From Magallana gigas (Eukaryota): DNA of 64,000 nt. Shown here in pieces: positions 53,106 to 58,072 of this stretch (positions within the stretch are counted from its first letter, which is position 1; each line of letters starts with the position of its first letter). Below the pieces are notes generated by a model that saw nothing but the letters and a program-made list of their open reading frames with translations, did not search any database and was not told where the DNA came from. The position numbers and the translations under genes are program-made. The stretch lies in the NCBI RefSeq assembly GCF_963853765.1, contig NC_088857.1, positions 7,192,001-7,256,000 of the forward strand, written 5' to 3'.

Positions 53106-56100
53106 TTAAACGTGCCCTTCGGCCATTTTAGGCTTGTAATTATGAATAGTATTTTCTGAGCCGGGAACGAGTTCAAGAAAATCTTTGGGTCTCTTTCTAA
53201 ATTTTAGGCAGTCCTGGAGAAGTTGAGAAATGACAAGAACCATGACGACGATACCAAGGTAGACAAACCAAACAGTCCATGCCACGGGGCGAGAGTTCGC
53301 CACGAACACGCCCAATGAAATGTTTGCCAGAGCTAGCAAAATGGCCGACTTCCCGCCAATATAGTGAATCGATTCCCATATTACTCGATGAAGTGATTTT
53401 TTAGATTCCTCATTCGGGTGTTTTGGTCGACTGGAAGTAATGAAAATACAGCTATAATGAAAAAAAATCTTTATCGTTTTAAATGTGTATGAGTGTATTT
53501 GTATTTCATTACTTACAACACTGCATTGATCGGCTGTAAAAGTCCTAGTATTACCACCAGCAGCCCGATAATTCCATGAGCAAAGCCAAAATGTCTGGAC
53601 TGGACGGAAAGGACTGCCATGATAAACCCTGCTAAACTGCAAATCTGCCCAATGATCTGTAGGGCAATGAAAGCATGGCATGTATTTTATCATGCTTCTA
53701 ACCTGGGCAATACCTTACACCTCTACATGTAGGAAAAATGTTATACTTAAAAAAAAAGTTCTTGGTTAGACAATTCAGAAAAATAATAGTTAGCATGAAT
53801 TTAATTAAGTGCCATTGTTTAATTTTGCTAGTGGTAAATATGTAACTCATTATAAGTTATAGTGCTTAATCCATTCTTTCTGTATGGTTAAAGTACCAGT
53901 TATCGGCTAAGACCAGTTATCGGCTAAACTGAGAGGTCGGGTTTATAGCACGCGACTATCTGAGATTTTTCAATTCAGTCATCTGTTTCGAATAAAGAAA
54001 AGTAAGTTTGCTTGAAATATTTCTTAAATATGATTTAACCATGAGCTTGAACGATCATTGTTTACCGCTGATTTACATCTTTGCACTTTCAGCAGTGGGG
54101 GAAGTGACGTAATAAGTGAAAACTAGATTATGGCATCTTTGTGATACGTTACCATATACCTTCTTTGATTTGACATAATATCAATACATACCGGTATTAC
54201 ATGTACAAACAAAAGGAATTTATTAAACTCTAAGAGATTCATAGCGCAGTTGTACGCCTGATTGCACAATATTGTGTATTGAAAAGTCAGCGATTTTGTG
54301 TATTACCGTATGATAAGAAACGAACAATTTTATGAGTTTTGTTAATGTATTATAACCCTTACTACCTTTAGTCTGGCCCAAAAAGGGCCATAATTCAAAG
54401 TACATTATGCAGAGTATCAAATCAACATGTACAGGGATTTTACTATGTTATAATCGCAAAGCCGATAACTGATACAGTAAATTGTAAAGCATGGCAAATT
54501 CGGGGCATGCTAAAAAGCACAAAAACAATATGTTTTGAGTTCTTAACAATGATATAATCTAACAGATGGATAAACAAGGAAATCACCATTTAACGTATGT
54601 CAAGTTTTATCCAAAAATATCAAGAAACAAAGAAATACGGAAAGAAAACGTTAAATTTAGCGGATAACTGGTACAGTGCCAGTTTGGTATTAAAGTTATG
54701 CACGTGTTGCGATGGGTACGCAGAATACACTACTATAATTATAATGTGTTCCTAGCTCATACTTGTAAAATCAGATGGAGGTAAAACCATGTGTCCCCCG
54801 ATGATTTGAAATATCTAGCAATATAGGCTCCCCATACGACGAATATCCCCCATCCTATCACCATTAGACAGCCATGCGCCAGTATAAAGTTGGTAAAAGA
54901 TCGCGGGCACTCAACCGTGACGCTTCTTTCAGCTGTCCACGAATCACCTCGAAGCAGCCACAGGTCGCCTAGCAACGATCCACTGAGAAATAAAACGGAT
55001 CTTTTATCAACAGCTGAATACACATTAACGGCATTAATGAAGAAATCTCAAGATAAAAAAGAATTAAAGAAACACATTTATTGCCGTATTTAAGCTTTAC
55101 TCCTATAACCTGTTGATATCGTATCCTCCAAACATAAAGATTCCATCTGGACCTGTTACCATGGCAACTGATGCCCTTAGTGGAGGAAAGGATTGCTGTG
55201 AATAAATGCAAAATCAAAACACTGTCATCTATGTTGACATTGTTATTTTGTTACAAGTATTTGTATCGAGATGCACTGAAGTTACATGTATACTATGGTT
55301 GTCTATGAAGTCTTACTTTGGCCGTTGTCATGTGCAGCGACCAAATCTTGTTGACCGGGTCAAACAGTCCCACCATGTCCGCTGGTGACCTTGTCGTCTT
55401 CAAAATGTCAAGTTAAACTTTTTCATTAGGATTACAGGATTCTTTAAGAAACTTTTAAACAATTATGAATATCGAGAAAAAAAAATAATCATTTTCCTTG
55501 AAGCATCACTTTTAAGAATGGTTGTTAGTTATCGTTTTTATTCCTAAATGTATTCTATAAGCCCATGCATCTGATGGCCTTAAAGCAACCCTGGGTCGAT
55601 AGTGGCATACTAAGTACCTGAATGACCTGTGGCGTGTCTTCTATTCCTCCATACAACACCACTCGTCTCAGACCGTTCCCTGGAGGCAACAGGGCCATAC
55701 CGCCATAAACCCTACATATCAACCCAATCATTTCAGTCTAATGTTTTCCTACAGAACGTTGCTGGTATTCATTTTTACTATGTACATGTAAATATACTGT
55801 TGTATTGACCTTAAATCAAGCTTGAATTTGCCAATTGTTGCTGACCTAAAGTATTCTGAGAATGATATAGCGATATACAGAAGATGTACGCCATTATAGA
55901 ACCACACGATGTGCAGCTAGTTTGTTACCTGGGAACGGGACAGGTGTTCACTTCCGCCCAGATTAGACTCTGTGCATCAAATACCCACGTGTCTCCGGAC
56001 GGACACTCTCCGCCTGTATCCACGTACCTGAAACCAGAACCCGTGGTATAACACAAACAAAGAGGTATTTTACTATGGACATTATTGACATGTATTACAA

Positions 56101-58072
56101 TGTGGGACAACACAAAACAAAGGTACTATGGACATCAAGCACTGTAAACCAACTTTTATTCGCTTGCGAGAATTTTTCGCGAGGATCGCGAAACCCTCAT
56201 CGTTGCCAATATTTATCGCCGCAAACCAGTACTCAGATGTCTTTGGTATTATACTTTTTAGATTATTCAGTAATACACTAAATCGCGAAAATTAATCGCC
56301 ACAAACCGGGTTTTCTTCGGTCAATCGCTGAATAAAGTCGTCGTGAATAAAAGTTGTTTTATATTACAATGTGTACATGTACACGGTAGTTGTTTTATAT
56401 TACAATGTGTACATGTACACGGTAGTCTTATATTACAATGTGTACATGTACACGGTAGTCTTATATTACAATGTGTACATGTACACGGTAGTCTTATATT
56501 ACAATGTGTACATGTACACGGTAGTCTTATATTACAATGTGTACATGTACACGGTAGTCTTATATTACAATATGTACATGTACACGGTAGCCTTACGAGA
56601 GACATCCACCAAAGATGAGCAGACTGTTGGGGCTAGTCAATGTCCCTGCATGGTGACATCGGGCGTGGGGGTAGTACGGAGTGTAGGCGTTACACTGGCC
56701 ATCTTTACAGTCAACTATAAACATTATACATACATGTAAACGCTATGATCATATATAAACGCTGTAGACAACAGATTTCAATGTTGTGAGAGGTACCTAA
56801 ATCTTCAACAAAAATGAGCATCCAGGATTCTAAATCATGCACGTCATTTTATTTTACCAAACTTTACAATGTCAAAATATTAAAGAGGCGCATTCAACAC
56901 AGCGAGAGCTCACAATGATTTCCTACACCTGCAACACAAATTTTGGCGCGCGCAAGCGCTCGCTCTGCTGGACACGCCTCTAACGTTACCAACACTCCAC
57001 TCTTCTGTGTCAATGTCAAATATGACCGTGTCAAAGTGACTCGTATCCGAAATTCCCTGATGGACGAAGAACTTTGAACTCCCGGGGTATACCCCTCCCG
57101 ATGCCCCAGACCGAGGCTTGGGATAATAATCGTCTTTCAATTGTTGTCTGCAGTTGGAAACATGATTCTAATATTGTAAATGAAAAAAACATCAACATTT
57201 TTTTTTTCAAATGAATACCAATGCGTATTTATTGATAAAAACTGTAACCTATTGGTCTTGCCCAACTCCTTCCATTCTTCAGTTCTAAATAAAGAGAACA
57301 AACATATCAAAGCATAGTAGTTAAAAAGGACTAGTGATAAACCCGGTAAAAAGTCAGTTTGAACGATTGATAAAAGATTTGTGCATAATGTATCAAACAG
57401 AACAATTGGAAAGCAAACCTAATATCAAATTTCCAGATGTCATTGAAATAATTGCTGTTTCCACCTTCTCCAGTGGCAATATAGAAGAAGTCATTGCTTG
57501 ATCCATAAACCATAGCAAACCTGGCGGTGGGGTGTATGCTCTTTGTGACGTTACGCCACGACCCTGTGAACAAACAGAACTACATGCATCTGTATCCATC
57601 ACATGTACAGTCCGTTAATCAGGATCCACATGCAAAGCTATGATATAAACATATTATTTGGTATTATTTTTTTCGCGAGTAATGAAGCAATTCAACAATT
57701 CAACGTTTTGGAATTACGATAGCCCTACATTTGACAGTTGTTTGATATTTCCGATCGAGTTTTACAGCTGGCTTAAATATTTCTTTAGTATGGAAAAACA
57801 GTGTAATACAAGGAAAATTAACCAGATCGCTTACCATTAAAACTTCCTAGGCTCTCAAACACCCAAGTATCATGCAGGATTTCATTCGAGTTTGACCGTC
57901 CCCCAAACAAGATCAGATAACTCGTGTTGCCCGACATGACCAACCCAAGGGCGTGGTCCCGTCTGCTGGTTGGGGACACGGAAGCATTGTTTGCCAATGA
58001 CTCCCACTGCAGTCCCCTAATCAGTGGAGAAAAAAACAAAATCAGTGAAAGTGACAACAGGGACAGCGCCAT
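53106..58072 (-). CDS. Signal peptide + six Kelch repeats + cytochrome b561 (FRRS1/CYBDOM-type, 5 TM) fusion protein; 12 coding exons, about 579 aa
   Basis: Exons 58072-57835, 57563-57419, 57284-57249, 57147-56990, 56714-56597, 56027-55929, 55711-55618, 55397-55317, 55195-55110, 54982-54763, 53656-53517 and 53430-53106 are all GT-AG, in phase and stop-free (1740 nt). Kelch signatures: P..R...(F/Y)GG...D.W.FD...W. b561 histidines: AHGCLM, YLHLILQ, AHGIIG and SIHYIGG. Confidence 0.9.
53893..54674. mobile_element. Non-autonomous TIR element in intron 10 of the Kelch-b561 gene
   Basis: Left end GTACCAGTTATCGGCTAA (duplicated), right end TTAGCGGATAACTGGTAC, and an additional internal end-like copy gccgataactgatac at about 54461. 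Confidence 0.7.
56135..56365. mobile_element. MITE with TIRs (ctgtaaaccaacttttattcgc / gtgaataaaagttgttttata)
   Basis: Imperfect inverted ends around a CG-rich core of tcgcg subrepeats. Confidence 0.65.
56357..56594. repeat. 33-bp minisatellite (about 7 units) beginning at the exon 5 donor of the Kelch-b561 gene
   Basis: The unit is ttatattacaatgtgtacatgtacacggtagtc. The array abuts the donor GT at 56596-56595. Confidence 0.95.

What the first reader, a model, noticed from the sequence alone, without database searches (positions are those of the whole stretch)
53106..58072. Kelch beta-propeller fused to an intact cytochrome b561: candidate new trans-membrane redox architecture
Seen in sequence: the 12 exons splice in frame to about 579 aa. 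They encode a signal peptide, six Kelch blades (PTSRR, PTARF, PKPRS, PHARC, PVPRV, PPLRA) and a 5-TM b561 domain with all four heme-ligand His in place. Established: in animals and plants this b561 type (FRRS1/SDR2, plant CYBDOMs) normally carries an extracellular DOMON domain, and animal Kelch propellers are mostly cytosolic adaptors. Inference: here a secreted-side propeller replaces DOMON and could be a substrate-binding or catalytic module supplied with electrons from the cytosol, for example for iron reduction, ascorbate recycling or extracellular redox chemistry. I know of no characterised protein with this architecture, but could not search for one.
Basis: partly seen in the sequence, partly recalled or inferred. 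Interest (0 to 1): 0.88.

Follow-up and report, generated by a model that had tools for sequence, protein, structure and literature searches.

The report
Kelch propeller fused to cytochrome b561
This is a real, expressed oyster gene for a membrane protein that joins an outward-facing six-blade Kelch propeller to a two-heme cytochrome b561 electron channel. The family is conserved from sponges to molluscs, and also occurs in a green alga and a perkinsid, but nobody has studied it.

Summary
On the minus strand, 12 GT-AG exons (58072 to 53106) encode 579 aa. The product is identical to RefSeq XP_019918430.3 of Magallana gigas, which is misleadingly named 'kelch domain-containing protein 10'.

RNA contigs from three studies show all 11 splice junctions. 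Single contigs join Kelch exons to b561 exons, so this is one mRNA.

The protein has a signal peptide, a six-blade Kelch propeller, a short Cys-containing linker and a 5-TM cytochrome b561. Four His are invariant in 27 homologues and align with the heme ligands of the solved plant b561 structure 4O6Y.

By sequence and fold, the b561 part is closest to the CYBDOM/FRRS1 type, which normally carries DOMON. No DOMON is present here.

The same architecture occurs in molluscs, a brachiopod, a nemertean, an annelid, rotifers, cnidarians, a sponge, a green alga and Perkinsus. Five full-text literature searches found no description of it.

Most likely mechanism (inferred): electrons pass from cytosolic ascorbate through the two hemes to an acceptor held by the extracytosolic propeller. 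The acceptor is unknown.

Verdict: a new variant of a known kind. It is catalogued in databases but uncharacterised. Interest is moderate to high. This scan holds no earlier finding on b561.

The parts
53106..58072 (-). Complete coding region, 12 exons: 58072-57835, 57563-57419, 57284-57249, 57147-56990, 56714-56597, 56027-55929, 55711-55618, 55397-55317, 55195-55110, 54982-54763, 53656-53517, 53430-53106 (stop at 53108-53106)
   Evidence: All introns are GT-AG and the frame is open for 579 aa. All 11 junctions are seen in RNA contigs of 3 studies. The product is identical to P0191/XP_019918430.3.
58013..58072 (-). Signal peptide, aa 1-20 (hydrophobic core LSLLSLSLILFF, then SPLIRG before the conserved L-x-W start of the mature chain)
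   Evidence: Kyte-Doolittle peak at aa 1-21. Nearly all full-length homologues have a hydrophobic N-terminus that ends just before the conserved (Q)LxW. AF2 pLDDT is low there. No signal-peptide predictor was available, so this is inferred.
54943..58012 (-). Six-blade Kelch beta-propeller, aa 21-365 (exons 1-10, introns included in the span). Family-specific sites: Tyr203 (56685-56683), His209 (56667-56665), Cys230 (56604-56602), Cys240 (56005-56003), Cys261 (55942-55940)
   Evidence: Kelch Pfam families lie above threshold. The AF2 model has 24 strands and mean pLDDT 87. Foldseek matches six-blade Kelch domains of LZTR1, KLHDC10, KLHDC2 and plant specifier proteins, with TM by target about 0.8. 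Invariant residues come from the 27-sequence alignment.
54889..54942 (-). Linker from propeller to membrane, aa 366-383, with near-invariant Cys377 (54909-54907)
   Evidence: Cys377 and Cys261 are each present in at least 90% of homologues and are lost together in P0057. A disulfide between them is inferred; no coordinates were available to test it.
53199..54888 (-). Cytochrome b561 domain, five TM helices, aa 384-549 (exons 10-12). Heme-ligand His388 (54876-54874), His421 (54777-54775), His452 (53578-53576), His494 (53366-53364). Conserved apical His447 (53593-53591). Conserved cytosolic-face Arg408 (54816-54814) and Arg487 (53387-53385)
   Evidence: PF03188 scores 27.7 bits at aa 388-513. 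The four His are invariant in 27 sequences and align with the four His of chain 4O6Y_A. The b561-only AF2 model has pLDDT 89 and five helices. Its top five PDB matches are 4O6Y, 4O7G and 5ZLE.
53109..53198 (-). Cytosolic C-terminal tail, aa 550-579, basic at its start (RKRPK)
   Evidence: It is hydrophilic, has pLDDT below 50, and is poorly conserved. With five TM helices and an outside N-terminus, it lies in the cytosol (inferred).
58073..58102 (-). 5' UTR as far as the RNA contigs reach. It contains a 6-codon uORF (ATG at 58094, TAA at 58076-58074) that ends 1 nt before the main ATG
   Evidence: Contig ends lie at 58098-58102. The uORF was read directly from the sequence.
52984..53105 (-). 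3' UTR, with AATAAA near 53001-53006 on the minus strand. RNA contigs end at 52984-53012
   Evidence: Contigs carry no strand, and a convergent + strand neighbour ends at about 52991, so the exact 3' end is not fixed.

Best explanation
The gene encodes a membrane protein whose N-terminal propeller lies outside the cytosol and which has five TM helices. It is built on the CYBDOM-type cytochrome b561 core, and a disulfide-stapled six-blade Kelch propeller replaces the usual DOMON domain.

Proposed mechanism:
- Cytosolic ascorbate docks at a basic cytosolic face formed by Arg408, Arg473 and Arg487 and reduces the inner heme (His421/His494).
- The electron crosses the membrane to the outer heme (His388/His452).
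- It then leaves to a one-electron acceptor held at or near the propeller/b561 junction. The family-specific residues there are apical His447, and Tyr203/His209 with the Cys230-Cys240 loop of blade 4.

The propeller is read as the acceptor-side recognition module. The acceptor could be a metal chelate such as Fe(III) or Cu(II), a small radical, or a partner protein or glycan.

Shown here: the gene, the transcript, the domain architecture, the conserved heme ligands, the b561 subtype, and the family's distribution.

Inferred: heme binding, ascorbate as donor, topology, the disulfides, and the acceptor. Whether the protein sits at the cell surface or in a secretory or endosomal lumen is open.
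For: - The gene model and the single mRNA are established.
- Pfam finds Kelch plus PF03188 and no DOMON or Reeler at E<=1.
- The four His are invariant across 27 homologues from sponge to mollusc and a green alga. They align with the heme ligands of the solved AtCYB561B2 structure (profile E=2e-4).
- The fold of the b561 part matches 4O6Y/4O7G (TMq 0.64-0.66) and Dcytb 5ZLE (TMq 0.59) as its top five PDB matches.
- The closest b561 relatives are CYBDOM/FRRS1 proteins: 23-30% identity and TM 0.77-0.88, Atlas TM 0.87-0.88, and 34-35% sequence identity to plant CYBDOMs.
[quoted passage not shown] Its predicted ascorbate-binding Arg lies 7 residues before the fourth His (PMC10784544). Arg487 lies 7 residues before His494 here and is at least 85% conserved.
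- In CYBDOMs the b561 core is TM1-TM4 with an extracellular N-terminus (PMC10691727), and the layout is the same here.
- Ectodomain Cys230/Cys240 are invariant. Cys261/Cys377 are near-invariant and are both absent in P0057. Cys195/Cys200 co-occur.
- His209 is invariant in the fused family but absent from the nearest bacterial Kelch relatives, which do share the GGC..GPCPxxD loop.
Against: - There is no biochemical evidence of any kind for any family member.
- Neither the classical CYB561 ascorbate residues (K77/K81 of 4O79) nor the SLHSW-type motif is conserved in the alignment.
- The propeller gives only generic Kelch fold matches with no telling active site.
- Only one propeller His is invariant, which is too few for a galactose-oxidase-like copper site.
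- I could not read model coordinates. The proposed disulfides, and the position of His209 relative to the outer heme, are therefore untested.
- The docking job (propeller against b561 with two hemes) gave no verdict.
- A poly(A) raw-read run, of which about 1% was read, showed no exon cover. Expression may be low or tissue-restricted.
Confidence: 0.62

Rival explanations
1. The propeller is itself a redox-active or catalytic domain. It would bind a metal or a third heme through invariant His209 with Tyr203 or a conserved Met, inside the disulfide-stapled blade-4 loops. It would receive electrons from the outer b561 heme, as the DOMON heme does in CYBDOMs. The protein would then be an ascorbate-powered extracellular enzyme rather than a simple reductase with a binding module.
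For: - His209, Tyr203 (Phe in 2 of 27) and the YxPxYPHAR motif are specific to the b561-fused family and absent from the nearest free bacterial Kelch relatives.
- Under the standard Kelch strand order, the motif lies in a D-A loop and the Cys230-Cys240 loop is a B-C loop. Both sit on the face that usually binds ligands (inference).
- Plant Kelch specifier proteins, which are among the fold matches, are iron-dependent enzymes (for the match; their chemistry is from my own knowledge).
- DOMON, the domain replaced here, carries a heme.
Against: - A single invariant His is not a complete ligand set for any known metal or heme site.
- No known cofactor motif was found.
- The fold matches are generic, at 15-19% identity.
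- The geometry could not be checked.
Confidence: 0.2
2. The b561 part works as an ordinary reductase on its own, for example on ferric or cupric ions or monodehydroascorbate. The propeller is only a targeting, adhesion or oligomerisation module (lectin-like or protein-binding) with no part in electron transfer.
For: - Kelch propellers are typically interaction modules.
- The closest non-b561 relatives are secreted bacterial Kelch proteins, some annotated as sialic-acid mutarotase-like, and weak NANM Pfam hits occur in several family members.
- Dcytb and CYB561 reduce substrates without any ectodomain (own knowledge; structures matched).
Against: - The propeller is joined to TM1 by a short, conserved, Cys-containing linker. 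Family-specific invariant residues sit in the propeller, which suggests a fixed functional unit.
- The full-length AF2 pTM of 0.83 suggests a defined domain arrangement.
Confidence: 0.15
3. The fusion is an annotation or assembly artefact: two neighbouring genes, one Kelch and one b561, read as a single gene.
For: Older RefSeq models split the locus into a 232-aa 'adagio-like' protein and a 310-aa 'cytochrome b561 and DOMON' protein.
Against: - Single RNA contigs from two studies bridge exons 12 to 5, and all 11 junctions are seen in three studies.
- The same architecture at similar length is predicted independently in more than 20 species of several phyla.
Confidence: 0.01

Closest known systems
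CYBDOM proteins (DOMON + cytochrome b561): plant HYP1/CRR and At3g07570-type, and animal FRRS1/SDR2 and Drosophila CG8399
   Same: - They share the b561 subtype: 23-30% identity and TM 0.77-0.88 to Swiss-Prot CYBDOM/FRRS1 models, and 34-35% identity to plant CYBDOMs.
- The heme-binding core is in TM1-TM4, with a signal peptide and an extracytosolic N-terminal domain directly upstream.
- A conserved Arg lies 7 residues before the fourth His, as in HYP1.
   Different: - No DOMON or Reeler is detectable at E<=1. A six-blade Kelch propeller takes that place.
- As a result, no Met/His heme site of the DOMON kind is present.
- This protein has five TM helices and a cytosolic tail.
Classical single-domain cytochromes b561 (CYB561, Dcytb/CYBRD1, AtCYB561B2, CYB561D1/D2)
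   Same: They share a four-helix, two-heme core with four conserved His. The solved structures 4O6Y/4O7G and 5ZLE are the best PDB fold matches.
   Different: - They are more distant: TM 0.59-0.69 and E about 1e-3.
- They have six TM helices, with both termini cytosolic and no ectodomain.
- The K77/K81 ascorbate residues are not conserved here.
Six-blade Kelch domains such as KLHDC10, KLHDC2 and LZTR1 (the source of the RefSeq name), and extracellular or secreted Kelch propellers (attractin-type, bacterial NanM-like)
   Same: - They share the six-blade Kelch fold, with TM by target about 0.7-0.8.
- Pfam PF24681 and PF24981 hit.
- Bacterial secreted relatives share the GGC..GPCPxxD disulfide loop, at up to 31% identity.
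   Different: - KLHDC10, KLHDC2 and LZTR1 are cytosolic ubiquitin-ligase adaptors without a signal peptide or TM helices, at only 15-18% identity.
- The YxPxYPHAR motif with invariant His209 is found only in the b561-fused family.

Membership tests
Eukaryotic cytochrome b561 (Pfam PF03188) | Profile match above the curated gathering score | tested here: met
   P0191 scores 27.7 bits against a cut-off of 23, at aa 388-513 over profile positions 2-130 of 137. Homologues score 23.5-37 bits.
Eukaryotic cytochrome b561 (Pfam PF03188) | Four conserved His on four consecutive TM helices (H1/H3 for the outer heme, H2/H4 for the inner heme) | tested here: met
   His388, 421, 452 and 494 are invariant in 27 sequences. 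Each aligns with a His of 4O6Y_A at chain positions 51, 84, 118 and 157.
Eukaryotic cytochrome b561 (Pfam PF03188) | b561 fold | tested here: met
   The b561-only AF2 model has pLDDT 89. Its top five PDB matches are 4O7G, 4O6Y and 5ZLE, at TMq 0.59-0.66.
Eukaryotic cytochrome b561 (Pfam PF03188) | Binds two b-hemes and is reduced by ascorbate | not testable with these tools
   This needs expression and spectroscopy.
CYBDOM (cytochrome b561 + DOMON) | At least one DOMON domain upstream of the b561 domain | tested here: not met
   There is no PF03351 (DOMON) or Reeler hit at E<=1 in P0191. Residues 21-365 are Kelch. It is therefore not a CYBDOM by definition.
CYBDOM (cytochrome b561 + DOMON) | b561 core in TM1-TM4 with an extracytosolic N-terminal domain, and a b561 sequence of the CYBDOM subtype | tested here: met
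   The layout is shown. The definition comes from PMC10691727. The nearest b561 domains by sequence and fold are CYBDOM/FRRS1. A b561-only tree could not resolve the branching order.
Kelch beta-propeller, six blades | Repeated Kelch motifs (PxxR, GG doublet, D-x-W, W) that form a closed six-blade propeller | tested here: met
   Six PxxR motifs are present. Kelch_4, Kelch_3, Kelch_6, Kelch_1 and Kelch_2 all lie above threshold. The AF2 model has 24 strands. Fold matches to six-blade Kelch structures have E about 1e-19.
KLHDC10 orthologue (the RefSeq name) | A cytosolic Kelch protein of about 440 aa that acts as a CRL2 substrate receptor and has no membrane domain | tested here: not met
   There is only fold-level similarity, at 14-16% identity to KLHDC10 models. 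The protein has a signal peptide and a b561 domain. The name is an automatic transfer.
Galactose oxidase / copper radical oxidase | Seven-blade propeller with a Cu site formed by two His, two Tyr and a Tyr-Cys cross-link | tested here: not met
   The propeller has six blades. Only one propeller His (His209) is invariant. No galactose oxidase structure appears among the 50 listed PDB fold matches.

The most novel reading that the evidence does not exclude
The Kelch ectodomain is not a passive binder. It would be a new kind of acceptor-side redox module, with a metal- or cofactor-bearing site built around invariant His209/Tyr203 and the Cys230-Cys240 loop, wired to the outer b561 heme. That would define a third class of multidomain b561 enzymes: ascorbate-powered extracellular oxidoreductases in sponges, cnidarians, lophotrochozoans, a green alga and Perkinsus. 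No vertebrate or insect member was met in these searches.
Probability: 0.2. Interest if true: 0.8.

Novelty: new variant of a known kind. Interest (0 to 1): 0.58.

Why it matters
Published overviews name CYBDOM proteins as the exceptions to single-domain cytochromes b561 (PMC10691727). This locus belongs to a second, widely conserved multidomain class in which a Kelch propeller replaces DOMON.

The ESM Atlas holds a cluster of 119 members, mostly mollusc, and another of 50 rotifer members. Members also occur in cnidarians, a sponge, a brachiopod, a nemertean, an annelid, a green alga and Perkinsus. No member has been studied.

Characterising one member would show what an extracytosolic propeller does with electrons delivered from cytosolic ascorbate. 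Candidates are metal reduction for uptake, extracellular matrix or shell chemistry, and redox defence. It would also help explain why b561 cores repeatedly recruit ectodomains.

The finding also flags misleading automatic names: 'kelch domain-containing protein 10', 'GLUTELIN PRECURSOR ACCUMULATION 3', 'actin-fragmin kinase' and 'putative ferric-chelate reductase 1'.

Tried and rejected
- Pfam on single exons: the Kelch pieces were detected, but the b561 pieces got no PF03188 hit. The whole protein was needed.
- phmmer of the b561 part against PDB sequences found nothing. A family profile was needed.
- Foldseek with the full-length model returned only Kelch matches, so the b561 part was folded and searched separately.
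- Complex prediction, with the propeller aa 21-371 against the b561 part plus two hemes, gave no verdict (score 0.05, mark 0.34, controls not run). This is neither support nor evidence against.
- A maximum-likelihood tree of 36 b561 domains was star-like. Of 33 inner branches, 15 had support under 80, and long branches attracted each other. It cannot show whether the Kelch-b561 proteins form one clade apart from CYBDOMs.
- Raw poly(A) reads of run X19 (about 1% of the run read) covered only intronic repeats, so they say nothing on strand or transcript ends.
- A galactose-oxidase-like copper site was considered and rejected, because the propeller has six blades and only one invariant His.
- A tandem paralogue inside the window was looked for and not found. 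Paralogues lie about 49 Mb away on the same contig.
- Five literature searches found no description of the architecture or of the locus: kelch + cytochrome b561, b561 + kelch, cytochrome b561 / CYBDOM / domain architecture, LOC105317526, and cytochrome b561 + propeller.
- Model coordinates could not be read, so no Cys-Cys or His-heme distances were measured.

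
Full report
**The observation**

The finding lies on the minus strand. Six-frame translation of 53000-58200 shows a chain of open segments with Kelch-like and hydrophobic content. Joining them at GT..AG sites gives 12 exons, 1740 nt, and 579 aa plus a stop. The ATG is at 58072 and the TAA at 53108-53106.

- the six PxxR blade motifs;
- a hydrophobic N-terminus;
- five hydrophobic helices after aa 384;
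- four His, each near the start of TM1 to TM4.

**Is it one gene?**

RNA contigs from three independent studies (runs X1, X6, X7) carry all 11 introns of the model as joints with CT..AC ends on the + strand. Single contigs cross the domain boundary:
- X6 record 3 (1255 nt) runs from 53012 through exons 12, 11 and 10 on to exon 5;
- X7 record 8 (1170 nt) does the same;
- X1 record 2 covers exons 6 to 1 up to 58098.

One odd joint in X7 (56712|56990, with GA between) has the same length as the normal junction. It reads as a synonymous allele at the exon edge. Raw poly(A) reads from X19, of which about 1% was read, covered only intronic repeats and add nothing.

The model is letter-for-letter identical to P0191 = RefSeq XP_019918430.3 of Magallana gigas (LOC105317526), named 'kelch domain-containing protein 10'. 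Other alleles in the same 90% cluster differ at 12-15 residues. Older annotations split the locus in two or named it 'putative ferric-chelate reductase 1'. The reading 'two separate genes' is therefore refuted.

**Domains**

Pfam on the whole protein gives the Kelch families far above threshold. It also gives PF03188 Cytochrom_B561 at aa 388-513, with 27.7 bits against a cut-off of 23. No DOMON or Reeler appears at E<=1.

An AF2 model built from a 27-sequence family alignment is confident, with pLDDT 87.3 and pTM 0.83. It shows:
- a poorly packed N-terminal helix, read as the signal peptide;
- 24 beta-strands forming six blades;
- a short linker;
- five long helices;
- a disordered tail.

The propeller gives only generic six-blade Kelch matches at 15-19% identity: LZTR1, KLHDC10, KLHDC2, the dynein heavy-chain Kelch, and plant specifier proteins. 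The RefSeq name is a fold-level transfer, not orthology.

**The b561 part**

A profile of the family's b561 domains finds the solved Arabidopsis CYB561B2 structure (4O6Y, E=2e-4). All four family His align with the four His of that chain.

Folded alone (pLDDT 89), the domain's five best PDB matches are exactly the solved eukaryotic b561 structures: 4O7G/4O6Y at TMq about 0.65 and Dcytb 5ZLE at 0.59.

Against Swiss-Prot models the ranking is clear:

| Rank | Matches | E-value | TM | Identity |
|---|---|---|---|---|
| 1-18 | 16 CYBDOM or FRRS1/SDR2 proteins and 2 plant b561 domain-containing proteins | 1e-8 to 1e-5 | 0.73-0.88 | 19-30% |
| 19 onward | classical CYB561 and CYB561D1/D2 | about 1e-3 | 0.59-0.69 | 18-21% |

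The ESM Atlas shape search gives plant CYBDOM clusters at TM 0.87-0.88. A region-restricted sequence search finds plant CYBDOMs at 34-35% identity as the nearest non-Kelch proteins.

As in CYBDOMs, the heme core is TM1-TM4 rather than TM2-TM5 (PMC10691727).

**Topology (inferred)**

- The N-terminus is a hydrophobic stretch ending in SPLIRG, just before the conserved L-x-W start of the mature chain.
- In b561 proteins H1 and H3 hold the non-cytosolic heme. Here H1 (His388) sits at the start of TM1, directly after the propeller, so the propeller lies on the non-cytosolic side.
- The two predicted cytosolic loops and the tail are rich in Arg and Lys.
- The ectodomain has invariant Cys230 and Cys240. 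It has near-invariant Cys261 and Cys377, which are both missing in P0057. Cys195 and Cys200 occur together in most molluscs. This pattern is expected of disulfides in a secreted domain.

I could not read model coordinates, so the disulfides are not verified.

**Family and distribution**

A HMMER scan of 1.84 billion representatives with exon 12 found 85 hits. All ten full-length ones that I tested carry Kelch, and nine of the ten also match PF03188.

Named members come from these groups:
- gastropods: Gigantopelta, Haliotis, Patella, Lottia;
- bivalves: Mizuhopecten, Argopecten, Pinctada, Saccostrea, and a partial Solemya entry that shows only Kelch;
- a partial chiton entry that shows only Kelch;
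- the brachiopod Lingula;
- the nemertean Lineus;
- the annelid Lamellibrachia;
- rotifers;
- cnidarians: Nematostella, Actinostola, Pocillopora, Sanderia;
- the sponge Oopsacas;
- the green alga Edaphochlamys;
- the alveolate Perkinsus chesapeaki.

The ESM Atlas has a cluster of 119 members (mostly molluscs) and one of 50 members (rotifers). The oyster genome has further copies on the same contig near 55.98 and 56.00 Mb. I saw no vertebrate, arthropod or nematode member, but these searches cannot prove absence.

Residues invariant across all 27 aligned sequences:
- in the b561 part: the four His, Arg408, Gln466 and Trp490;
- in the propeller: His209 and Arg211 (motif YxPxYPHAR), and Cys230 and Cys240 (loop GGC..GGPCPSGD).

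The nearest Kelch proteins without b561 are secreted bacterial ones, for example from Ardenticatenales at 31% identity. They share the Cys loop but not His209 or the Tyr-Pro motif. The fused proteins from animals, the alga and Perkinsus share these propeller-specific motifs, which argues for a single origin of the fusion. A tree of the b561 domain alone was unresolved.

**How it probably works**

All characterised eukaryotic b561 proteins carry single electrons from cytosolic ascorbate across a membrane. This includes the CYBDOM protein HYP1, shown by oocyte electrophysiology (PMC10784544).

HYP1's predicted ascorbate-binding Arg307 lies 7 residues before its fourth His. Here Arg487 lies 7 residues before His494 and is conserved. 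Arg408 is invariant and Arg473 is conserved on the same face.

I therefore expect this path: ascorbate, then the inner heme (His421/His494), then the outer heme (His388/His452), then an acceptor. On the outer side the family conserves His447, five residues before His452. Dcytb uses an apical-loop His to hold the metal substrate (own knowledge).

Under the usual Kelch strand order, the His209 motif is a D-A loop and the Cys230-Cys240 stretch is a B-C loop. Both lie on the face that normally binds ligands. If Cys261, also in a D-A loop, is bonded to Cys377 in the linker, that face would be tied close to TM1 and the outer heme.

Overall this favours the propeller as the acceptor-side module.
- Best explanation (0.62 for the package): the propeller holds the substrate.
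- Rival (0.2): it carries a cofactor of its own.
- Rival (0.15): it only targets or anchors the protein.

The docking test of propeller against b561 gave no verdict.

**Comparison and novelty**

The protein works like a CYBDOM but fails the defining DOMON test, so it is not one. It is a b561 by every sequence and fold criterion that could be tested. It is a Kelch propeller, but it is neither a KLHDC10 orthologue nor a copper radical oxidase.

The family exists in RefSeq and UniProt only under automatic names. Five full-text searches found no paper describing it. A recent comparative paper names CYBDOMs as the exceptions to single-domain b561 proteins.

I rate it a new variant of a known kind. 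The family is real, conserved and uncharacterised. It is of clear interest to people working on trans-membrane redox and invertebrate metal or ascorbate biology, though it is not a new principle.

Noticed in passing
window 56359-56595: A 33-bp tandem array (7.1 copies, 97% matches) fills the start of intron 5. It begins directly at the exon-5 donor (GT at 56596-56595, minus strand). The repeated copies read ATAAGA where the true donor reads GTAAGG, so they are not spare donors. RNA contigs splice across the array correctly. Two other notes on this window (s1-382460, s1-382395) describe arrays next to splice sites, so this may be a local or genome-wide habit.
   Followed up: partly
window 53657-54762 (intron 10): The long intron inside TM2 of the b561 domain holds dispersed repeats. 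Their RNA depth reaches about 610 in X7, against about 44 on the exons. Many reads run off into unlike sequence, with loose ends at 53893, 54409 and 54658, so the repeats are probably transcribed from other copies. A 17-bp unit is repeated 1.9 times at 53895-53927.
   Followed up: no
window 58074-58094, minus strand: The 5' UTR holds a 6-codon upstream ORF (ATG at 58094, TAA at 58076-58074). It ends one base before the main ATG at 58072 and lies inside the transcript contigs that reach 58098-58102. It may act as a translational control element.
   Followed up: no
window 52600-52991, plus strand: A convergent neighbouring gene has a last exon that encodes a single-pass TM segment and ends at the stop 52896-52898. 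A poly(A) loose end lies at 52991 in X7. Contigs of the Kelch-b561 mRNA reach down to 52984, so the two 3' ends abut or overlap by a few bases.
   Followed up: no
G000:C5:55980817-55981494 and G000:C5:56000789-56004497: Two further loci with Kelch-b561-like exons (36-51% identity to this protein) lie about 49 Mb away on the same contig and about 20 kb from each other. They probably belong to the second oyster lineage seen in Saccostrea (P0100, 45% identity).
   Followed up: partly
P0214 (Perkinsus chesapeaki, 571 aa): A parasite of bivalves encodes the same Kelch + b561 architecture, including the PHARC and GGC..GGPCP motifs, at 30% identity over 98% of the length. Ancient inheritance, transfer between host and parasite lineages, and contamination were not told apart.
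   Followed up: partly
P0191 aa 35, 212 and others (window 58072-53106): Oyster alleles in the same 90% cluster differ at 12-15 residues. The window has Thr35 in the first blade motif (PTSRR), where the other four full-length alleles compared have Pro. One allele (P0199) has Arg in place of Cys212.
   Followed up: no
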